DNA of 63,911 nucleotides, the filler included, from Octopus bimaculoides (Eukaryota): NCBI RefSeq assembly GCF_001194135.2. It is 9 parts of 7 records of this genome, joined end to end, with 100 filler letters (N's around TTAATTAATTAA, not from the genome) between each part and the next. Parts side by side here need not be neighbours in the genome. Positions count along the whole stretch, not along the records: positions 11,672 to 36,913 come from NC_068984.1; 8 more parts are not named here. The stretch is one strand, 5' to 3'. Position numbers and translations under genes: made by a program. Position 1 is the stretch's first letter. Every line of letters begins with the position of its first letter. The notes beneath the pieces were generated by a model. It was not told where the DNA came from and searched no databases. It worked only from the letters and a program-made list of their open reading frames with translations. Shown here piece after piece: positions 14,496 to 36,510 of this stretch.

Positions 14496-14880
14496 TTCCT
14501 GCATGCCACCACCCTAGCTTGGTACTTTTTATCGAATCCAAAAGCTTGAAGGGCAAAGTTGACTTCAGCGGGATTTGAACTTGGAGCGCAGAGAATTGGA
14601 ACAAATCATCACCATCATCCTTTGACATGGTTGAACAACCAATCCCAAGTAGTCAGGATTTACAATACGATCGACTTCAACACCTAACCTGGTGCTTGAT
14701 TCGGTTGTACTAGTCATCCTTTCGATTGCTGAATACAAAGTCGTGACTCACAAGACCTTCTTTCGGATGACTTTCCTAAGTCACCATCTCACCCTTGTAA
14801 CTTCCTTTCATCCTGTTGATTAGAACAAGCACTGCGTAGTTTTCTATCTAACGCTCAAGCTACTCTGCAAAATCACCTCC
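14496..14880 (-). mobile_element. Family A SINE split by a ~218-bp insertion (14605-14822)
   Basis: SINE body at 14496-14604 and head at 14829-14880. The insert is flanked by GAACAA at 14599-14604 and 14823-14828 and ends in a GAT-repeat tail on the minus strand. Confidence 0.6.
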
Positions 14881-15078: not shown

Positions 15079-15959
15079 GTAAGTGCATGGGAGGCTGGCA
15101 AGAGAGCATCATACCAGTATGGCCAATATAGCAGTTATGGGTCGGGAAGCTTACAACTTTTACGTTTGCAATCGAACTTATAAATTACATTAACCATTAG
15201 TAACTTACTTGTGAATTTACATGCTTGCAGTTTGTTATTCAAATAACAAGATTTTTAATCATATTAGTTTTGAAGTTCATAATTAGTTTTAGTCTATTAT
15301 TTAATGTAATGCATTTACATTCTGTTTTATGAAGTTTTTGAGAATGTGTTTATCTATTTTATAGTCAGTACGCATTTGATTCATGGAATAGATTTTATGA
15401 GTGACTTGCATTTTTTTCATAGTTGTAGTATTTGTTAGTATTTGTTGTGTTGTATTTATGTATGTATTGTTCTGTGTTGTATTTATGTTTGTGTTGTTCT
15501 GTCTATCAGCCTATCAGTATGTTAGAATACCTTTTGTTGACTAGTGCTTGATTTATTCTATGAAAGAAAATGTAGTTGCCCTTTAAAGTAAGGCTTTTAC
15601 CACTAACATTTTGTATCTGTATGGACATTCTTTGTCGCCATGTTAGTACATGCTTTTGTAGGTGTTTTTGACATAAACGGACGTGATGTATCTGTTATTT
15701 TCTACCTTTACCTTTAAATCTAGACATGGAAATTTTGTAATGCTTGGAGTTTTATTCGTATATTTCTGGATATTTTCTAGATATTCCTTTAGTTTGACTA
15801 CATGTTTCAGTGCGTCTATTATGACGTGTATATCGTTCTCATATATGGTGTATATCGCGTTTCTCGCTTTCTAACCCTTCGTATGTATGTATATACGTAT
15901 GTACATACATACATACATACATGCGTACATGTACACATATGAATAAGTATGTGTACATG

Positions 15960-16340
15960 TAAACAAGGTTACAGGTATGGATGTCATTACATATGTGCTA
16001 AACTTCATGGATGTTTTACATATTTTGACAGTAACTGATAAACTGTAGCTATATAATCTTTTGATTAGGCCTGCTCTTTTTGGTTTTAAGAAACACGGTT
16101 TCTCAAGATTAGTACCAAAGTAGTGAGTCACATAGCCAAGGGTGTCAAAAATCATTAGTGAAATTTTAAAATTATAGCTTGGATTATGTAACTGTCGAGT
16201 TTTCATCAGTTCGGCATAGATGTTTTCTTTTTCATTTCACTTTAACTTTATGTTGGCATTTACTGGGCAACTAATTTCAAATGTTGTAGTCCATGCGTGG
16301 CTCATAATCTTTGTAATGCTAGATGTGGAAATGGATGGAG
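15960..16340 (-). mobile_element. R4/Dong-like RLE non-LTR retrotransposon, 3' fragment
   Basis: FEISCPVNANIKLK*NEKENIYAELMK...IFDTLGYVTHYFGTNLEK...SVTVKICKT aligns with the fragments at 22.5-23.0 kb and 39.7-40.0 kb. Followed by mixed TATG/TACA repeats. Confidence 0.75.
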
Positions 16341-18835: not shown

Positions 18836-19337
18836 NNNNNNNNNNNNNNNNNNNNNNNNNNNNNNNNNNNNNNNNNNNNNNNNNNNNNNNNNNNNNNNNN
18901 NNNNNNNNNNNNNNNNNNNNNNNNNNNNNNNNNNNNNNNNNNNNNNNNNNNNNNNNNNNNNNNNNNNNNNNNNNNNNNNNNNNNNNNNNNNNNNNNNNNN
19001 NNNNNNNNNNNNNNNNNNNNNNNNNNNNNNNNNNNNNNNNNNNNNNNNNNNNNNNNNNNNNNNNNNNNNNNNNNNNNNNNNNNNNNNNNNNNNNNNNNNN
19101 NNNNNNNNNNNNNNNNNNNNNNNNNNNNNNNNNNNNNNNNNNNNNNNNNNNNNNNNNNNNNNNNNNNNNNNNNNNNNNNNNNNNNNNNNNNNNNNNNNNN
19201 NNNNNNNNNNNNNNNNNNNNNNNNNNNNNNNNNNNNNNNNNNNNNNNNNNNNNNNNNNNNNNNNNNNNNNNNNNNNNNNNNNNNNNNNNNNNNNNNNNNN
19301 NNNNNNNNNNNNNNNNNNNNNNNNNNNNNNNNNNNNN

Positions 19338-20899: not shown

Positions 20900-22150
20900 T
20901 TATTTTTCATGTATTCCGGATTACACTACGACCAAAAAATATACACAAGAAAAAGAGCAGTACACAAATTAATGACAAAGAAAGCAAAAGGGTGACGAAA
21001 AGTTTTTGATTTTACAATTTTTTTAAAACAACATTTGAAAAGTTTCTTACTGCAATGACTAGAGAGATATTTAGACGGATATGTTCAGATTATTTCAAAG
21101 AGAAAGATGAGTTTCCGACATTTTTCACTGGAAAGATATAATGAAGATTTGTTTCGATCTGAACAAGATTTCCAACGTGGAAATGTAATTAAAATATTTT
21201 TATCAATGAAACTGATGGTAAAATGTTCGAATTGGCAAATACTTTGACGATGTTAAATGACTTGAAATGTAATTATTTTGAAGTTATATAGAAAAATTGA
21301 CCACATATCTTGAAGGGGAATGAAACCTAGTGATGTTGAGATATAATATTTACAAAAAACTGGAATGAGTATTACTGATTTTGAGGTATAATTAAAGCAG
21401 AAATCGTTTGACTGTAACTATGAAGATACAAACTATGTGGTCAGCAACTGATTGACTTATGAGCACGTGTATGAAAAATGTGCAACGAGTAGTTTTCAAG
21501 GAAACAGATCCAGCATTCAGAAAAGTATTGCAAATTGCTGTGGCAACAGAGTGAGTCACTGAAAGCGTTTCAAATTTGCTAGAAGGAAAGCCGCAGAGAA
21601 AAGCTGTGCAGAGAAAAAAATGATACTATGAACCGGAATCAAAAGCAAAATTGTTGCAGATGTAAAGCTACAAATCATTCAAGTAAAATTGTCTAAAGAA
21701 AAATCAAAAAGCAATTTCAGCCATAAAAGCGTCATCTTAGGAAGGATTACAGATTCAGATTAAATCAAAATAAGGATAAACAACAACGGAATAATGAAAC
21801 AAATTTTAAAAGAAAAACTGAGAAAATATTATGTTAAGAATAACAAATGCAACGAAAAGAAGTCCATTTAAAAATTCAGTTGAAAATCAATGGACAGTCA
21901 ACTGAATTCGAATGTGCCACAGGAGCAGCTGTGCCCATAGCTGAAATTACTAAATGGATAAAGATAAGCATGCCTTAATTGAATTTTATCATAATTCAGC
22001 TTTTTGGCCATCGGCACAACTAATTTCACCGAAAGATGTGTGTAAAGTCTCGGTTATATACCAAGCAAAAAACTCCTCACAAATTGAGATTGTTTACTGA
22101 AAGAAATGGGTAGTGACTGAATAAGAAGGTTTGAAATACACGAATGCTCC
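20900..22150 (+). mobile_element. Gypsy/Ty3 LTR retrotransposon gag-protease remnant, heavily decayed
   Basis: VVFKETDPAFRKVLQIAVATE (gag C-terminal pattern) and KINGQSTEFECATGAAVPIAE at about 21.88-21.95 kb (eroded DTGAAVS aspartic-protease motif). Confidence 0.6.
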
Positions 22151-22498
22151 ATAAATGCTTAGGTACGAGAATATGAATACAAATGTGAATATGAATACAA
22201 AAATGAAACAAAAGGAGAAATTGACAACCAATCGCAAACACGTTTAGACAAAAGTTTTGTGGTATTTTTTACCTGGTTTAAGTCTTTTCTCGAAACTGAA
22301 GGCTCATTTACAATTGAAATAACAAACATTACAGAAATTCTACAAGTCATGTTAAGCACTTTACTGTTGCATTGTGTACTTCGTCGTTTTTATTGCATTC
22401 GATTTCACTGGACTCTCTCATACATACATACATACATACATACATACATACATACATACATACATACATGCATGCATACATGTATATATGTATGTATT

Positions 22499-23110
22499 AT
22501 GCGGCACGATGTTGTTGCTAAAACAATTTATAACACCATCCGCAAAAAAGACTGTCCTGAAATAAATTTAGAACATCCCTCTGTTATGGAATGCATTCAT
22601 AAACACCAACTGAAGGAATATTGGTGGAGTATTCCCATCAAAACTTCTGTCAAATGTAAACATAACAGGCCGAATATTGTTGTTTGGGACAGAGAGGCAA
22701 AAGTATGTACCGTCATAGAAGTCAGTTGCCCTGCAGATATAAACATCTCTTAGAAAATCAAAGAAATCAAAAGATATCTATGGACAATTGCTTCGCAACC
22801 TCAAGCTTCTATACCCGGAATATGAATTCATATTCATACCATTAATAATTGGTGCACTAGATTTTGTTAGTAAATGCTTAAAGGAGAATCTGGATAAACT
22901 GGGAATTTCAGAAAGAGAAATCGACCAGCGAATTCGTACACTACAAGTGCAATCTGTGAGTGGAACAGTAAAACTATGCAAGACTTTTTTCAAGTGACAA
23001 ATGTGAATTTACCTGTGTTAACTATATCCCAAAGACGGAGCCTTGTATCTTTGTTGGAAACCGGCTCTCTCCTCAGTGAAAGATTTATAATAATTAAAAA
23101 ATAGAAAAGA
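22499..23110 (+). mobile_element. R4/Dong-like non-LTR retrotransposon 3' end (RLE domain plus 3' UTR) inside a (TACA)n array
   Basis: RHDVVAK...HNRPNIVVWD...IEVSCPADIN...LLRNLKLLYP...IPLIIGAL: RHD / PD(>PN) / E restriction-like endonuclease signature. (TACA)n at 22419-22480 and 23112-23176. Confidence 0.85.
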
Positions 23111-23178
23111 TATACATACATACATACATACATACATACATACATACATACATACATACATACATGCATACATACATA

Positions 23179-24249
23179 TTAGGTTGTTTCACATGAAATG
23201 TCGTATTTGAAAGGTAACAATAAAATGTTTCAGAAGTGTTAGAAAACTGATTTATTTAATCAAAATTTAATCCATGTTCATTTATGACGTTTACCCAACG
23301 TTTCTCTATGTCATATATTCCATCTTTAAAAAAAATTCATCTTTTGCTGTGATAAACTGTCCGAATGCTTCAAGTACTTCTTCTTTGTTTAAAAAATATT
23401 TTATTGCTTATGAAAAGCTCACAATGCTTAAATAAGTGATGGGTTGCTTCTTTTTCAAATTTTCATGCATACAATCAATTTCCTGGCAATAAGATGTTGC
23501 TGTTACCGTTTTTGCATGTTGCAAAAATGAATGATGAATAACCATACAGTGACCACTAACGTTTTAGGGTGCAATAGTAGATTTGGGTAGTGTTTAGGTG
23601 ACTCACCTGCATCTAATCACTGTCCTGTTCTCCTGCTGTTGTCAAAGAGTATCCATTTCCCATCACAAGTAATGATTTGATGCAAAAATGGTCTTTTTCC
23701 AGTCGAGAAAGCAATAAGGAGCACACTTCGAGGCGTCTGTTTTTCTGAATCTCGTTCAGTTGATGTGGAGCAAACCTATCCGTTTTCTTGACTTTTCCAA
23801 TTTTTTATAGATGTCTGAAAACAGTTGTGAGAGATGGTTGGAGTTCTGATGAAAGTTTCGGACCTTTGTTCTCAGAATTTGTTCAACCAAAGCTTTTAAT
23901 CTATCATGCCTACCCCTTGGTTTATTTTCAAGGCTATCATCTCCTGAACGAGAGCTTTGGAACCATCTCTGAACAGTTCTGATGTCAACAAAAACATTAC
24001 CAAAGTCCCGCTTGATATTCCGTTGAGCTTCTGCGGCAGAGTGACCTAGTTTTACTCATACGAAAAATATCACTCAACATACTTTGGTTGTTATCATTTT
24101 CATAAGGTCTGTGGGTACGAATTTTGTATACCAATATTGTTGGGAAAGAAAAAGAGTCAAGATTAAATGCAAGGTATACATAATTGAGTTTTTAAATGAC
24201 TGAAATAACAAGTATTTAAAAATGCGACATTTCATGTGAAACTACCTAA
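23179..24249 (-). mobile_element. Mariner-like element (1071 bp) with both TIRs and TA target duplication; transposase decayed
   Basis: Left end TA|TTAGGTTGTTTCACATGAAATGTCGTATTT and right end AAATGCGACATTTCATGTGAAACTACCTAA|TA differ at 2 positions. Confidence 0.9.
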
Positions 24250-24261
24250 TACATACATACA

Positions 24262-24462
24262 TATGTTTAAGAAAGCTTCGAGATGATAGTAACATCGATC
24301 ATCAAAGCAGTTCATCATGGACCAATAGCCGGATTACTACCTCCCACTTTGAAGGGTATGCGTTTGCAATCCAGGAACAGGAAATATCAACCAAGTATGT
24401 GATGCACAAAAGGGACAGATATGCAGGAAAAGTAGTAAAATATAACAACCGATGCAAATACA
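24262..24462 (+). mobile_element. R4/Dong-like fragment (post-RT region before the CCHC motif)
   Basis: Open frame KLRDDSNIDHQSSSSWTNSRITTSHFEGYAFAIQEQEISTKY...NNRCK matches the EGxxxAIQ(D/E)QxIxT motif. Starts right after TACA repeats. Confidence 0.75.
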
Positions 24463-24499
24463 AATATATATATACACACACACGCACACACATTTAGTG

Positions 24500-25860
24500 T
24501 TTTAGCAATTGCCGCCTCTTTTTTTCTAAAAGCTACACAATGTCACCAAATTATTATAGTTCATTCCTTCGTTCTCATTCTATCACGTCTTTCTGACAGT
24601 CATTTTAAAATTTACTTTTACTTTCCTTCCATTCTGGATTGCACCTAATCAAGAAGTATGCATAATCACAACTGTGGGCTATTTCATAGTTTAGACTTTT
24701 TTTATTTGAACTAAAAAGCATTCTATTATAAGATCATTAAATCCTCATTAATTAACGGCATTCTTAGTTAGGCAAAGAAGTGCGCACTCAAAGAGCCAAT
24801 GCATTAATTCACAGTTTTCCTGGAGGTCTGCAAAAATATGATTGCGAAAGCTTTTAAGTGATTGTCCAGGAAACGCGAAATTAACTGGAATTTTTATCAT
24901 CAATTACATTGCCAATATGTTTTTTGTTTCCTTTATGAATTCTAAGAAGTTCCACACTATTCTGTCCACTGTCATTTGCTTGCATCTGAATGCACATGTT
25001 TCAACTGAATCTGAAGATTTGAACTTCTCAAAGTTCAATCTTCATTAATTTCTTGTGCATGACTTCCATGTGTAGCACAGTTGAGAGAATTTTGTTCTTG
25101 TTACTAGAACATATCATTGAAATTCAACCAAAAGTTCCATCAGATTCAGGAAATCCTCAATATGCGGTTCACTACCTCAAACAACTCGTTAGCACTAGAT
25201 GCTTCATCTTTATGAATCTTGTTGGCTGGTTAGAGTATCAGTTACATTTCTTGGTATTACAATGAAATTTTAATTCCAAGTTATATTCAAATGTACTTTG
25301 AAGCGAGAATGTACGATTAGGCTTTTAAACTTATATCTACAGTAGTTTTTTTAGTCGAGATTCATTAGTGAACCTCTTTACCGAACTCTTGATCATTGTG
25401 TCGAAGAACATTATTCCTTGAAATTAGTTTTTGTCATGCTATAAATCACTACAATGTGAGTCTTATCCATTTAACAAAAAACTTGTACTGTTAACCAGGG
25501 CTGTGGAGTCGAAACTATTGGTACCTCCGACTCTGACTCCGCCTTCTCTTTATGTAATTAAGTAATTGAGGTCTACATATCTCATAAACCATATCCATAC
25601 GCTTGTACTTTGAGTAGGCCTATATGTTATTACTGGTTTATATTAAATAAAGATATTGTGAGTCGAAGTCGGTATAGTTTTACTGATTCCAACTCCAGCT
25701 ACCCCTTAATTGTTTCCGACTCCACAGCCCTGCTGATAACAACTGCAGAGTGTGTCCAACTAACCGCATGAGTGGCGATAATTCAATAAAATGAAGTAAA
25801 CATCCATGCAATGTCAACATACTGTACAGAAACGCAGTAAAAACTTCTTTTCGCATATAA
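24500..25860 (-). mobile_element. Helitron Pif1-like helicase remnant, very decayed
   Basis: Minus-strand traces in helicase order: KFLLN, HGSHAQEIN (cf. GSRAQIIN), DLQENCELMHWLFECALLCLTKNAVN (cf. WLxERAILAPKNxxV). Interrupted by the hAT MITE. Confidence 0.45.
25496..25732. mobile_element. hAT-type MITE (237 bp)
   Basis: Perfect 16-bp TIR CAGGGCTGTGGAGTCG / CGACTCCACAGCCCTG. 8-bp flanks CTGTTAAC and CTGATAAC (7 of 8 match), as expected for a hAT TSD. Confidence 0.9.
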
Positions 25861-27388: not shown

Positions 27389-28047
27389 NNNNNNNNNNNN
27401 NNNNNNNNNNNNNNNNNNNNNNNNNNNNNNNNNNNNNNNNNNNNNNNNNNNNNNNNNNNNNNNNNNNNNNNNNNNNNNNNNNNNNNNNNNNNNNNNNNNN
27501 NNNNNNNNNNNNNNNNNNNNNNNNNNNNNNNNNNNNNNNNNNNNNNNNNNNNNNNNNNNNNNNNNNNNNNNNNNNNNNNNNNNNNNNNNNNNNNNNNNNN
27601 NNNNNNNNNNNNNNNNNNNNNNNNNNNNNNNNNNNNNNNNNNNNNNNNNNNNNNNNNNNNNNNNNNNNNNNNNNNNNNNNNNNNNNNNNNNNNNNNNNNN
27701 NNNNNNNNNNNNNNNNNNNNNNNNNNNNNNNNNNNNNNNNNNNNNNNNNNNNNNNNNNNNNNNNNNNNNNNNNNNNNNNNNNNNNNNNNNNNNNNNNNNN
27801 NNNNNNNNNNNNNNNNNNNNNNNNNNNNNNNNNNNNNNNNNNNNNNNNNNNNNNNNNNNNNNNNNNNNNNNNNNNNNNNNNNNNNNNNNNNNNNNNNNNN
27901 NNNNNNNNNNNNNNNNNNNNNNNNNNNNNNNNNNNNNNNNNNNNNNNNNNNNNNNNNNNNNNNNNNNNNNNNNNNNNNNNNNNNNNNNNNNNNNNNNNNN
28001 NNNNNNNNNNNNNNNNNNNNNNNNNNNNNNNNNNNNNNNNNNNNNNN

Positions 28048-34178: not shown

Positions 34179-34801
34179 TACAATGTGGCACTAATGGTCA
34201 GAACTCCAAACGTCGCAGATGTCCTAAACATATGGATTTTTCTTTTAATCTCTAATATAGTAAGTTGAACTGCTGGAATATGTGTACCAAAACTACACAT
34301 AAACTGGAATATCAAACGTAAATATTTGTTAAGTTTTTTGTTATAGATGAAAAACGAGAGTCGTAAATTGTTCAAACGTTATCCTACATATAAAGCTTAA
34401 TAAGTATTAAAAAAAAATTGTAATTTGAATCGTTGGAACATCACCATCACGTCTTCATTATATATATATATATANNNNNNNNNNNNNNNNNNNNNNNNNN
34501 NNNNNNNNNNNNNNNNNNNNNNNNNNNNNNNNNNNNNNNNNNNNNNNNNNNNNNNNNNNNNNNNNNNNNNNNNNNNNNNNNNNTATAAATGAGTGTGAAT
34601 TCAGAGAATCGTGCGCCACGATTTTATTATACAATGCTGACCATACTTATTAATGCAAACTTGTACGCATTTCTTCCATACTGAAATTGACACTGCATGA
34701 AGGAGGTTGCGAAACGGCCATAGCCCTATGAAAATCATGTGGTTAAATCAATATATATTCATTTCTCATGCCTCCTGACTTTATGGTTATGTATATATAA
34801 T

Positions 34802-35614: not shown

Positions 35615-36510
35615 NNNNNNNNNNNNNNNNNNNNNNNNNNNNNNNNNNNNNNNNNNNNNNNNNNNNNNNNNNNNNNNNNNNNNNNNNNNNNNNNNNNNNN
35701 NNNNNNNNNNNNNNNNNNNNNNNNNNNNNNNNNNNNNNNNNNNNNNNNNNNNNNNNNNNNNNNNNNNNNNNNNNNNNNNNNNNNNNNNNNNNNNNNNNNN
35801 NNNNNNNNNNNNNNNNNNNNNNNNNNNNNNNNNNNNNNNNNNNNNNNNNNNNNNNNNNNNNNNNNNNNNNNNNNNNNNNNNNNNNNNNNNNNNNNNNNNN
35901 NNNNNNNNNNNNNNNNNNNNNNNNNNNNNNNNNNNNNNNNNNNNNNNNNNNNNNNNNNNNNNNNNNNNNNNNNNNNNNNNNNNNNNNNNNNNNNNNNNNN
36001 NNNNNNNNNNNNNNNNNNNNNNNNNNNNNNNNNNNNNNNNNNNNNNNNNNNNNNNNNNNNNNNNNNNNNNNNNNNNNNNNNNNNNNNNNNNNNNNNNNNN
36101 NNNNNNNNNNNNNNNNNNNNNNNNNNNNNNNNNNNNNNNNNNNNNNNNNNNNNNNNNNNNNNNNNNNNNNNNNNNNNNNNNNNNNNNNNNNNNNNNNNNN
36201 NNNNNNNNNNNNNNNNNNNNNNNNNNNNNNNNNNNNNNNNNNNNNNNNNNNNNNNNNNNNNNNNNNNNNNNNNNNNNNNNNNNNNNNNNNNNNNNNNNNN
36301 NNNNNNNNNNNNNNNNNNNNNNNNNNNNNNNNNNNNNNNNNNNNNNNNNNNNNNNNNNNNNNNNNNNNNNNNNNNNNNNNNNNNNNNNNNNNNNNNNNNN
36401 NNNNNNNNNNNNNNNNNNNNNNNNNNNNNNNNNNNNNNNNNNNNNNNNNNNNNNNNNNNNNNNNNNNNNNNNNNNNNNNNNNNNNNNNNNNNNNNNNNNN
36501 NNNNNNNNNN

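What the first reader, a model, noticed from the sequence alone, without database searches (positions are those of the whole stretch)
22419..24462. R4/Dong-like RLE retrotransposon apparently targeted to (TACA)n microsatellites
Seen: an RLE-domain 3' end (22499-23110) has (TACA)n on both sides. A second same-strand fragment from further upstream in the element (24262-24462) starts directly after the rest of the same TACA array, which a mariner later split. Established: R4-clade elements are often site-specific (R4 in large-subunit rDNA, Dong in TAA repeats). Inference: this family targets (TACA/TATG)n and inserts in tandem. I do not know of a TACA-specific family being described.
Basis: partly seen in the sequence, partly recalled or inferred. 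Interest (0 to 1): 0.72.

Follow-up and report, generated by a model that had tools for sequence, protein, structure and literature searches.

The report
Retrotransposon that inserts into TACA microsatellites
Two dead fragments of a jumping gene sit inside a (TACA)n simple repeat, and relatives from about a dozen other assemblies show that this lineage inserts into four-letter repeats, which extends an already known habit of such elements to a new repeat type.

Summary
Window 22499-23111 is the dead 3' end of a non-LTR retrotransposon with a restriction-like endonuclease (RLE): the RLE part from the RHD motif, one stop, one frameshift, catalytic PD changed to PN, then a 3'UTR. (CATA)15 lies 5' of it and (TACA)n lies 3'. 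A degenerate mariner (23179-24249, TA duplication) split the 3' array, and removing it restores the repeat in register. Fragment 24264-24462 belongs to the same family and covers the segment just upstream of the CCHC knuckle.

Relatives support targeting:
- Four full-length copies carry the same tetranucleotide array at both ends: (ACAT)n in L014, L019 and L020, and (CTTA)n in L012.
- 5'-truncated copies carry it too (L004, L005, L001).
- A near-intact copy lies in the octopod Argonauta hians.
- All 14 copies with a conserved, covarying 3'UTR hairpin have a tetranucleotide array 36-57 nt downstream.

Full-length relatives encode a Myb-like N-terminus, RT, CCHC and RLE, and have no APE domain. 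The predicted C-terminal fold matches R2 proteins.

Not settled:
- R4/Dong versus HERO placement, because no reference RT sequences were available.
- Whether the two window fragments are tandem insertions or one rearranged copy.
- One same-family copy (L021) lacks the pattern.

Microsatellite-specific RLE elements are already known, and I found no description of an (ACAT)n-specific one. I rate this a new member of a known kind.

The parts
22419..22498 (+). 5' flanking array: (CATA)15.8, then degenerate CATG/ATGT repeat, directly abutting fragment A.
   Evidence: TRF and sequence. The DNA upstream (21900-22418) is unique within the window.
22499..23003 (+). Fragment A, coding remnant. It is the C-terminal part of the RLE module, from the RHD motif to the C-terminus. 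It carries one stop, one frameshift near 22750-22775, a premature stop at 22995-22997, and PN in place of the catalytic PD.
   Evidence: Translation. tblastn and phmmer hits to P0001 (74%) and P0029 (55-58%). The family's predicted fold matches R2 proteins.
23004..23111 (+). 3'UTR of fragment A, ending in an A-rich stretch directly before the array.
   Evidence: About 83% nucleotide identity to the same-family copy L021 up to the last bases before the tail. Comparison of 3' ends.
23040..23065 (+). Conserved 3'UTR hairpin: GCCTTG, a 5-bp stem, loop TTGTT, the 5-bp partner stem, CCGGC. One stem pair is broken in this dead copy.
   Evidence: RNAalifold on 8 copies gave 9 pairs, 5 with compensatory changes. 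A regex scan found 14 copies, each with a tetranucleotide array 36-57 nt downstream.
23112..23178 (+). 3' flanking array or tail, (ATAC)16.8. The TA at 23177-78 is the left copy of the mariner target duplication.
23179..24249 (-). Degenerate, internally deleted mariner-type DNA transposon inserted later into the TACA array. It has 25-bp inverted repeats and a TA duplication.
   Evidence: Pfam HTH_48 (2.7e-7) and Transposase_1. Inverted repeats and TA read. Excision restores the array in register.
24250..24263 (+). Remainder of the same TACA array, including the right TA copy. It abuts the 5' end of fragment B with microhomology: the element's ATGCATGGATATGT against the array's ATACATACATATGT.
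24264..24462 (+). Fragment B, same family and same strand. It covers the segment between the RT and the CCHC knuckle (…W..TSHFEGYAFAIQEQEISTKY…NNRC). It lacks everything downstream. A weak continuation through (AT)n(AC)n reaches about 24532-24560.
   Evidence: tblastn. Profile HMM E 2.4e-26, positions 4-77 reliable.
15880..16287 (-). Third, more diverged dead copy of the same kind of 3' end: coding 16287-15994, short 3'UTR, then (ATGT)5 and (ATAC)n at 15930-15880.
   Evidence: ORF, sequence, tblastn E up to 1e-20.

Best explanation
The window holds dead copies of a single-ORF non-LTR retrotransposon. Its ORF order is an N-terminal Myb-like motif, reverse transcriptase, a CCHC knuckle and a restriction-like endonuclease. 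The lineage integrates into tetranucleotide microsatellites, here (TACA)n = (ACAT)n.

**Shown.**
- Family membership of both fragments.
- The domain order in full-length relatives.
- The RLE fold of the C-terminal module.
- The same array on both sides of full-length and of differently truncated copies, in many assemblies.
- Tandem copies sharing arrays.
- A conserved 3'UTR hairpin with compensatory changes, lying 36-57 nt before the array.
- A later mariner insertion into the array.

**Inferred mechanism.** Insertion is by target-primed reverse transcription. The protein binds the 3'UTR hairpin of its own RNA and the RLE nicks the repeat. The (ACAU)n end of the RNA pairs with the nicked repeat strand to position priming. 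Incomplete copying gives 5'-truncated copies. These rejoin to the upstream array at points of microhomology, such as the MHGY codons ATGCATGGATATGT at the start of fragment B.

**Target choice.** The repeat unit is probably set jointly by the Myb-like N-terminal domain and by the RNA tail. Related lineages use (CTTA)n or (CAGA)n. L004 and L005 are 86% identical in protein yet sit in (CATA)n and (CTTA)n respectively.

**Clade.** It is most likely what octopus repeat annotations call LINE/Dong-R4.
For: **Family and domains.**
- Searches place both fragments in the family.
- One search finds RVT_1 and zf-RVT and no endonuclease/exonuclease/phosphatase (APE) domain in four ORFs of 1041-1217 aa.
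- One search shows that only R2 proteins hit in the PDB, through the RT.
- Searches give a model of mean pLDDT 81 whose best matches are R2 proteins (E 3e-7, TMq 0.6), followed by PD-(D/E)XK nucleases.
- Searches show the N-terminal W-T-x-E...G-Y/F-x-K-R-L...A-K-R-I motif and no zinc finger.

**Targeting.**
- L014: (CATA)19 ... (ATAC)8(ACAT)9.
- L012: (CTTA)24 ... (CTTA)12.
- L008: 5' (ACTT)18.
- L019: (ACAT)13 ... (CATA)13.
- L020: (TACA)11 ... (ACAT)12.
- Argonauta hians L018: hairpin followed by an ACAT/(AC)n tail.
- L004: (CATA)49 on the 5' side and about 3 units on the 3' side. L005: (TTAC)20 and (ACTT)5.
- L001: three tandem truncated copies separated by (ACTT)n.
- Overall, 12 of 14 visible 5' junctions abut the family's repeat directly, not counting the ambiguous L018 junction.
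- Of about 20 visible 3' ends, 17 run straight into a clean tetranucleotide array. The exceptions are L018 (degenerate ACAT/(AC)n), L021 (AC-rich) and L007 ((AC)n-like, no hairpin).

**Hairpin.** One search shows 5 of 9 pairs with compensatory changes. One search shows 14 of 14 hairpin-bearing copies followed by an array.

**Window background.** One search shows that the only two TACA arrays of 10 or more units in the piece flank fragment A. One search shows that the outer flanks are unique in the window.

**Literature.**
- R4/Dong elements insert into rDNA or microsatellites and carry a diverged N-terminal Myb-like domain without zinc fingers (PMC7998251).
- Dong-R4 is the dominant RLE LINE group in Octopus vulgaris, at about 4.2 kb per insertion (PMC13282606).
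Against: - **L021.** This same-family copy is about 83% identical in nucleotides to window 22620-23105. It has no 5' array, and its 3' flank is (AC)n-like rather than (TACA)n.
- **Minus-strand window copy.** It has no 5' array, and its tail begins with the complementary unit (ATGT)n.
- **Fragment B.** It has no 3' half and no tail, so the tandem-insertion reading of this locus needs an extra deletion.
- **Tail versus target.** Because tail and target are the same sequence, protein-level recognition of the repeat is not shown. No empty site was seen.
- **Assembly effects.** Several full-length relatives are short-read metagenome contigs that stop inside the arrays. They are probably collapsed consensus copies.
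- **Clade.** Placement rests on architecture, target type and published annotation of octopus genomes, not on an RT tree.
Confidence: 0.8

Rival explanations
1. Tail only. (TACA)n is an element-encoded 3' tail that seeds microsatellites. The 5' arrays would then be tails of earlier, extremely truncated or decayed upstream copies, or tails of partner SINEs. On this reading the lineage makes and then re-uses its own arrays, and the protein does not recognise pre-existing microsatellites.
For: - Every hairpin-bearing copy has the array at a fixed 36-57 nt distance.
- In L005 and L001 the 5' (TTAC)n array is the tail of a tRNA-derived SINE.
- In L008 and L001 the 5' array follows another copy's 3' end.
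- L021 has a 3' repeat but no 5' array.
- L004 and L005 are 86% identical in protein yet differ in repeat unit.
Against: - In the window and in L004 the 5' array is preceded by DNA with no trace of an element 3' end.
- In L004 the 5' array has 49 units against about 3 on the 3' side. That fits insertion near the edge of a long pre-existing array.
- Even under this rival, insertion is still into an existing repeat array. It differs from the main explanation mainly in what recognises the array.
Confidence: 0.15
2. Fragments A and B are not two tandem insertions. They are the two halves of one copy, or of a dimer, rearranged or broken at a single hot spot just upstream of the RHD motif.
For: - In element coordinates B ends (reliably at profile position 77, weakly to 99) almost exactly where A begins (position 101).
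- B has no 3' half and no tail.
- An independent copy, L001 copy 2, is truncated at the same RHD point.
- The intervening codons (DITHV = GACATCACACACGT) are a proto-(AC)n. In B they have expanded into (AT)n(AC)n at 24463-24492.
Against: - The order A-array-B on one strand cannot arise from one simple event acting on a single B-A copy.
- Tandem arrays of truncated copies are seen directly in L001.
- Two break points within about 80 nt of each other have a chance probability of a few percent, which is not negligible.
Confidence: 0.3
3. The family belongs to another RLE clade, HERO or a NeSL-related group such as Togen, rather than to R4/Dong.
For: - Some HERO families and the Togen families are also microsatellite-specific (PMC4640811).
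- No reference RT could be compared here.
- Pfam finds no Myb domain at the N-terminus.
Against: - The ORF has no N-terminal zinc fingers and no protease domain.
- It has a diverged Myb-like motif of the kind reported for R4/Dong (PMC7998251).
- In Octopus vulgaris the recently active RLE LINEs are 1129 Dong-R4 insertions against 13 Hero and 1 R2. Mean length is about 4.2 kb, matching the 3.9-4.5 kb copies found here (PMC13282606).
Confidence: 0.3
4. Coincidence or passive accumulation. An ordinary, non-specific LINE fragment happens to lie in a microsatellite-rich region.
For: The piece is rich in (AC)n and ACAT-type repeats.
Against: - Three independent junction arrays occur in the window.
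- The same pattern recurs in about a dozen unrelated assemblies, and the repeat unit tracks the lineage.
Confidence: 0.02

Closest known systems
Dong (Bombyx mori) and Dong-like elements, R4 clade
   Same: - Single-ORF non-LTR retrotransposon with RT, CCHC and a C-terminal restriction-like endonuclease.
- No N-terminal zinc fingers, and a diverged Myb-like N-terminus.
- Inserts into a microsatellite, with the repeat on both sides and tandem copies (PMC7998251, PMC3812793).
   Different: - Dong's target is the trinucleotide (TAA)n in insects, molluscs, cnidarians and an ostracod.
- Here the arrays are tetranucleotides: (ACAT)n, (ACTT)n and (ACAG)n.
- Clade membership by RT phylogeny was not tested.
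R4 (nematode 28S rDNA-specific)
   Same: Same general architecture and the same site-specific lifestyle in a repeated target.
   Different: Its target is a unique site in 28S rDNA, not a simple repeat.
Waldo (WaldoAg1/2, WaldoFs1), R1 clade
   Same: It targets ACAY microsatellites, the same repeat class as (ACAT)n (PMC3812793).
   Different: Waldo has an APE-type endonuclease and belongs to an unrelated clade. The elements here have no APE domain and carry an RLE.
Microsatellite-specific HERO families (leech) and Togen ((TG)n, fish)
   Same: They are RLE-type elements specific for simple repeats (PMC4640811).
   Different: They use different repeats. Their relationship to this family is unknown, because no sequences were available for comparison.
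R2 (Bombyx, zebra finch, turtle; solved structures 8gh6, 9dou, 9nl2/3)
   Same: The RT is detectably homologous (E 1e-21). The CCHC + RLE module has the same fold. TPRT primed from a bound 3'UTR RNA structure is the model mechanism.
   Different: R2 has N-terminal zinc fingers plus Myb and targets 28S rDNA. Sequence identity in the RLE module is only 13-19%.
UnaL2/UnaSINE1 of eel (from my own knowledge, not checked here)
   Same: A 3' stem-loop plus a short tandem-repeat tail is needed for retrotransposition, and a SINE shares the LINE's tail. Compare the tRNA-derived SINE ending in (TTAC)n next to the LINE copies in L001 and L005.
   Different: UnaL2 is an APE-type L2-clade LINE and is not microsatellite-specific.

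Membership tests
RLE-type non-LTR retrotransposons (R2/R4/HERO/NeSL/CRE group) | Reverse transcriptase of non-LTR type in a long single ORF. | tested here: met
   RVT_1 at E 1e-22 to 1e-26 in four full-length relatives, with R2 proteins as the only PDB sequence hits. The window copies themselves are truncated and retain no RT.
RLE-type non-LTR retrotransposons (R2/R4/HERO/NeSL/CRE group) | C-terminal CCHC knuckle followed by a PD-(D/E)XK restriction-like endonuclease. | tested here: met
   The CX2CX8HX4C and RHD...(R/K)PD...E.SCP.D.N...K motifs are nearly invariant. The AlphaFold model (pLDDT 81) matches R2 proteins at E 3e-7, then PD-(D/E)XK nucleases. The window copy has PN in place of PD.
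RLE-type non-LTR retrotransposons (R2/R4/HERO/NeSL/CRE group) | No APE (exonuclease/endonuclease/phosphatase) domain. | tested here: met
   No PF03372 or PF14529 hit in any of the four full-length ORFs.
R4/Dong clade | RT domain groups with R4, Dong and Rex6 in a phylogeny. | not testable with these tools
   - No reference sequences were obtainable.
- The relevant papers were not held and the supplements carry no sequences.
- The Bombyx hit P0280 is an RTE-like chimera.
R4/Dong clade | No N-terminal zinc fingers, and a diverged Myb/SANT-like N-terminal domain (PMC7998251). | tested here: inconclusive
   A conserved motif with a Myb-like pattern and no Cys/His fingers is present. Pfam gives no hit, and no profile-profile or structure test was run on it.
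R4/Dong clade | Site-specific insertion into rDNA or a microsatellite. | tested here: met
   The same tetranucleotide array lies on both sides of full-length and truncated copies.
Dong in the strict sense | Target is (TAA)n. | tested here: not met
   The arrays are (ACAT)n, (ACTT)n or (ACAG)n. The (ATA)17 at the start of L013 is at a contig end and of unclear meaning.
Waldo (R1 clade, ACAY-specific) | APE-type endonuclease at the N-terminus. | tested here: not met
   No APE domain is present, and the element carries an RLE instead.
mariner/Tc1 (the element that split the array) | Terminal inverted repeats, TA target duplication, and a Mos1-type HTH with a DDE transposase. | tested here: met
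   25-bp inverted repeats and flanking TA. HTH_48 at 2.7e-7 and Transposase_1. The coding region is riddled with stops and is internally deleted.

The most novel reading that the evidence does not exclude
The repeat unit this lineage inserts into may be set largely by the repeat tail of its own RNA pairing with the nicked target, not by the protein. If so, a change of tail would retarget the element.

Two observations fit this reading:
- L004 and L005 are 86% identical in the C-terminal 262 residues but sit in (CATA)n and (CTTA)n respectively.
- The (CAGA)n-tailed L006 is the sister of the window's (TACA)n clade.

That would make this a naturally reprogrammable RLE retrotransposon, with a compact and well-defined 3' recognition hairpin.
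Probability: 0.3. Interest if true: 0.7.

Novelty: new member of a known kind. Interest (0 to 1): 0.45.

Why it matters
- **What it extends.** Microsatellite-specific RLE retrotransposons are known (Dong at (TAA)n, some HERO families, Togen at (TG)n). A lineage specialised on tetranucleotide arrays, with at least three different repeat units among close relatives, extends that list.
- **Study of target choice.** It offers a natural series for asking how such elements choose and change targets. That question bears on current efforts to redirect R2-type retrotransposons for gene insertion.
- **Repeat annotation.** Many (ACAT)n arrays, and the LINE/Dong-R4 fragments next to them in cephalopod-like genomes, are two faces of one process. 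This affects microsatellite marker design and estimates of repeat age.
- **Testable element.** The conserved, covarying 3'UTR hairpin is a concrete, testable recognition element.

Tried and rejected
- **Pfam on the window fragments** found nothing. The RLE part has no Pfam model.
- **The first single-sequence homolog search** gave only 7 short hits. A profile search was needed.
- **Attempts to obtain R4, Dong or HERO reference sequences all failed.**
  - The RTclass1 and Biedler papers were not held.
  - The Utopia and octopus-brain supplements contain no protein sequences.
  - Figure 6 of PMC7998251 gives no accession numbers in its text.
  - The Bombyx hit P0280 proved to be an RTE-like insertion fused to a kinase gene model.
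  - Cluster look-ups gave almost no names.
  - A contig look-up of the beetle protein P0136 found nothing.
- **Rfam** found no known family in the window piece or in full-length relatives. There was no HDV-like ribozyme, and the only hits were sub-threshold, microsatellite-driven miRNA matches.
- **Pfam on the N-terminal motif** found no Myb or SANT hit.
- **Extending fragment B past 24462.** tblastn alignments to different relatives are in inconsistent registers. The HMM posterior is low after profile position 77. I therefore treat the extension as possible only.
- **L013's (ATA)17 as a Dong-like TAA target.** I considered and rejected this. The repeat lies at the contig start, upstream of a shortened ORF, and may be internal low-complexity sequence.
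- **Self-BLAST of the outer flanks** found no other copies within the window.
Full report
**1. What is in the window**

The region reads as follows.
- Unique DNA is followed by (CATA)15.8 at 22419-22481 and degenerate CATG/ATGT repeat to 22498.
- Fragment A occupies 22499-23111.
- (ATAC)16.8 lies at 23112-23178.
- A 1071-bp element lies at 23179-24249.
- (TACA)3 lies at 24250-24263.
- Fragment B occupies 24264-24462.
- An (AT)n(AC)n stretch lies at 24463-24492, followed by DNA that is unique in the window.

The 1071-bp element has 25-bp inverted repeats (TTAGGTTGTTTCACATGAAATGTCG, one mismatch) and TA on both sides. Its broken reading frames hit HTH_48 (Mos1 transposase) and Transposase_1. It is therefore a dead, internally deleted mariner. 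Removing it with one TA joins ...ACATACA-TA-CATACATA..., which is in register with the repeat. The mariner therefore landed in a pre-existing continuous array of about 20 units.

Fragment A translates to RHDVVAKTIYNTIRKKDCPEINLEH...KEYWWSIPIKTSVKCKHNRPNIVVWDREAKVCTVIEVSCPADINIS*, then after a frameshift ...DIYGQLLRNLKLLYPEYEFIFIPLIIGALDFVSKCLKENLDKLGISEREIDQRIRTLQVQSVSGTVKLCKTFFK*.

Fragment B translates to ...LRKLRDDSNIDHQSSSSWTNSRITTSHFEGYAFAIQEQEISTKYVMHKRDRYAGKVVKYNNRCK.

**2. Both fragments belong to one protein family**

A sequence search and then a profile search found 521 relatives. All were short ORF fragments from eukaryotic contigs in metagenome-type assemblies. An exhaustive search of cluster representatives found 6846 at E of 0.001 or better.
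- Fragment A is 74% identical to P0001 and 55-59% to P0029.
- Fragment B matches the N-terminal 50 residues of P0029 at about 67%.
- A profile HMM of this region places B on positions 4-77 (E 2.4e-26) and A on positions 101-156.

B is therefore the stretch immediately upstream of the CCHC knuckle, and A starts immediately downstream of it.

A third, more diverged copy lies on the minus strand at 16287-15994 (tblastn to 1e-20). It is followed by ATGT and ATAC repeats.

**3. What the family is**

A scan of metagenome contigs and contig look-ups gave full-length copies: L008, L012, L013, L014, L019 and L020. They also gave a near-intact copy in the octopod Argonauta hians (L018, GCA_054771915.1).
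- The ORFs are 1041-1217 aa. They contain RVT_1 and a weak zf-RVT hit, and have no APE domain.
- By sequence, the only PDB hits are R2 proteins, through the RT.
- The N-terminus carries a conserved motif (...RPNRDY...KWTYELN.DL...G[FY].KRLK.LWD..HPE...[ST]AK.L...AKRI) with no zinc fingers. Pfam does not recognise it.
- The C-terminal module has CX2CX8HX4C, RHD, (R/K)PD, E.SCP.D.N and K..EK..Y, all nearly invariant.
- An AlphaFold model of P0029 with 58 relatives (mean pLDDT 81) matches the R2 proteins of zebra finch, turtle and silkworm best (E 3e-7 to 9e-5, TMq 0.5-0.6). PD-(D/E)XK nucleases follow.

In the window copy the catalytic PD reads PN, in line with its stop codon and frameshift.

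**4. Is the microsatellite a target?**

*Full-length copies.*
- L014 has (CATA)19 at its 5' end and (ATAC)8(ACAT)9 at its 3' end.
- L019 has (AT)25(ACAT)13 and (CATA)13.
- L020 has (TACA)11 and (ACAT)12.
- L012 has (CTTA)24 and (CTTA)12.
- L008 has (ACTT)18 at its 5' end.

*5'-truncated copies.*
- L004 has (CATA)49 on the 5' side and about 3 units on the 3' side, then unique DNA.
- L005 has (TTAC)20 and (ACTT)5.
- L001 has three tandem truncated copies separated by (ACTT)n.

*Other 3' ends.*
- L002, L010, L011 and L013 end in (CTTA)n or (TTAC)n.
- L015 ends in (ACAT)14.
- L006 ends in (ACAT)2(ACAG)n.
- Argonauta L018 ends in ACAT(AC)n...CATAC.

*Tally.* 12 of 14 visible 5' junctions abut the family's repeat, not counting the ambiguous L018 junction. 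Of about 20 visible 3' ends, 17 run straight into a clean tetranucleotide array. The exceptions are L018 (degenerate), L021 (AC-rich) and L007 ((AC)n-like, no hairpin).

Copies truncated at different internal points all touch the array directly.

In the window and in L004, the DNA upstream of the 5' array shows no element 3' end. In L005 and L001 the upstream array is the tail of a tRNA-derived SINE. In L008 it follows the hairpin of another copy. The lineage therefore also re-uses arrays that retroelements created.

*Counter-examples.*
- L021 is about 83% identical in nucleotides to window 22620-23105. It has no 5' array and an (AC)n-like 3' flank.
- The minus-strand window copy has no 5' array.

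**5. A conserved 3'UTR hairpin**

Between 36 and 57 nt before the array, all copies carry (G)CCTTG, a 5-bp stem, a TTGTT-like loop, the 5-bp partner stem, and CCGG(C).
- The inner stem differs between lineages in a compensatory way: ATTTC/GAAAT, TTCTA/TAGAA, CTATA/TATAG, CTATT/AATAG, CTGTA/TACAG and CCACC/GGTGG.
- RNAalifold on 8 copies finds 9 pairs, 5 of them with double changes.
- A pattern scan finds 14 copies, each followed by a tetranucleotide array. Eight further pattern hits on either strand, seven with no array and one with a short (AC)n run, look spurious.
- In the window the hairpin is at 23040-23065 with one broken pair.
- Rfam has no matching family.

By analogy with the R2 3'UTR, this is the likely RNA handle for the protein during target-primed reverse transcription. 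That step is inference.

**6. Target switching**

A neighbour-joining tree of the C-terminal ~225 residues is approximate and has no bootstrap support. It shows three groups.
- A basal group is entirely (ACAT)n: L014, L020, L019 and Argonauta L018.
- A second group is (CTTA)n. The (CATA)n copy L004 is nested in it as sister to L005, at 86% protein identity.
- A third clade joins the window copy, L003 and the (CAGA)n-tailed L006.

(ACAT)n is therefore probably ancestral, and the repeat unit has changed several times, at least once between close relatives.

The putative third helix of the N-terminal motif reads AKRI/AKRL in (ACAT)n types and ATRIE/ASRVE in (CTTA)n types. This rests on six sequences and is confounded with phylogeny. 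Whether the protein, the RNA tail, or both set the unit remains open.

**7. History of this locus**

The order is A (3' part), then the array, then B (upstream part), all on one strand. Two copies are therefore needed, or a rearrangement.
- B lacks its 3' half and its tail.
- Its reliable end (NNRC, 24462) is about 25 codons before the point where A starts. A weak continuation through the (AT)n(AC)n to about 24532-24560 would bring the gap down to 3-11 codons.
- The missing codons in relatives (DITHV = GACATCACACACGT) are a proto-(AC)n.
- L001 copy 2 is truncated at the same RHD point.

A truncation or breakage hot spot at this position is therefore possible. I leave this unexplained. Tandem insertion followed by a deletion is my preferred reading.

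The 5' end of B shows microhomology between the element's MHGY codons and the array.

**8. Comparison with known families**

- R4/Dong elements insert into rDNA or microsatellites. Dong uses (TAA)n in insects, molluscs, cnidarians and an ostracod, and has a diverged N-terminal Myb-like domain without zinc fingers (PMC7998251).
- Some HERO families and the Togen families are microsatellite-specific (PMC4640811).
- The APE-type Waldo elements target ACAY repeats (PMC3812793).
- In Octopus vulgaris, Dong-R4 is by far the most abundant recently active RLE LINE group. It has 1129 insertions covering 4.73 Mb, about 4.2 kb each. Hero has 13 insertions and R2 has 1 (PMC13282606).
- A full-length Dong consensus exists in the O. 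bimaculoides repeat library (PMC9115989).
- None of the papers I could search mentions an (ACAT)n or (ACTT)n target for such elements. Repbase entries could not be consulted.

Architecture, target type and host annotation all fit R4/Dong. The defining test, an RT phylogeny with reference sequences, could not be run.

**9. Verdict**

The finding is a new member of a known kind: a tetranucleotide-microsatellite-specific lineage of RLE retrotransposons, probably R4/Dong. Two further points emerged: a conserved 3' hairpin, and evidence that the repeat unit switches between close relatives. The host of the window was not identified. The only named host of a relative is an octopod.

Noticed in passing
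window 23040-23065; L001, L002, L005, L006, L010-L015, L018-L020: A conserved 3'UTR hairpin (GCCTTG, 5-bp stem, TTGTT loop, 5-bp stem, CCGGC) with compensatory stem changes lies 36-57 nt before the tetranucleotide array. No Rfam family matches it.
   Followed up: yes
L005 about 7530-7809; L001 about 5290-5372: A tRNA-derived SINE ends in the same (TTAC)n repeat that the LINE copies are inserted into. Both loci share the SINE's 3' sequence ...aaactcccg. It may be a SINE partner of this LINE lineage.
   Followed up: partly
window 22499; L001 about 5889: Two independent copies in different genomes are 5'-truncated at the same position, just before the RHD codons. Window fragment B ends near that same point.
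   Followed up: partly
L004 7950-9061 versus L005 7890-8955: Two truncated copies are 86% identical in protein and share 3'UTR sequence up to the last bases, yet one sits in (CATA)n and the other in (CTTA)n.
   Followed up: partly
L021 (Logan SRR11869394), whole 1016-nt contig: A same-family copy is about 83% identical in nucleotides to window 22620-23105. It is truncated elsewhere, has no 5' array, and has an (AC)n-like 3' flank. It is an exception to the pattern.
   Followed up: partly
window 22672-22680 (approx.): The catalytic PD of the endonuclease motif (HNRPDIV in relatives) reads PN in the window copy.
   Followed up: yes
window 13821-14512, minus strand: A second mariner-type transposase remnant (Transposase_1, E 2.9e-20), unrelated to the one in the TACA array.
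   Followed up: partly
window 12909-13235, plus strand: An ORF with a reverse-transcriptase-like FADN motif (…LIFADNVVLLG…), probably from a different, APE-type LINE.
   Followed up: no
window 12440-12595: A SINE-like GC-rich piece (…cttgagcaaggtgcttcatttcatgttgctcaagtc…) runs into an (ATGT)n/(TG)n array.
   Followed up: no
window 18836-19337, 27389-28047, 34475-34583, 35615-36510: Assembly gaps (runs of N) all sit next to (AC)n, (TC)n or ACAT-type arrays. The assembly breaks at microsatellites, so array lengths in this piece are lower bounds.
   Followed up: no
L018 (Argonauta hians BAAFZT010000047.1) 5995-9519: A near-intact copy with only two in-frame stops in a named octopod genome, with the hairpin and an ACAT/(AC)n tail. 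The annotated protein P0277 covers only the first 863 residues.
   Followed up: partly
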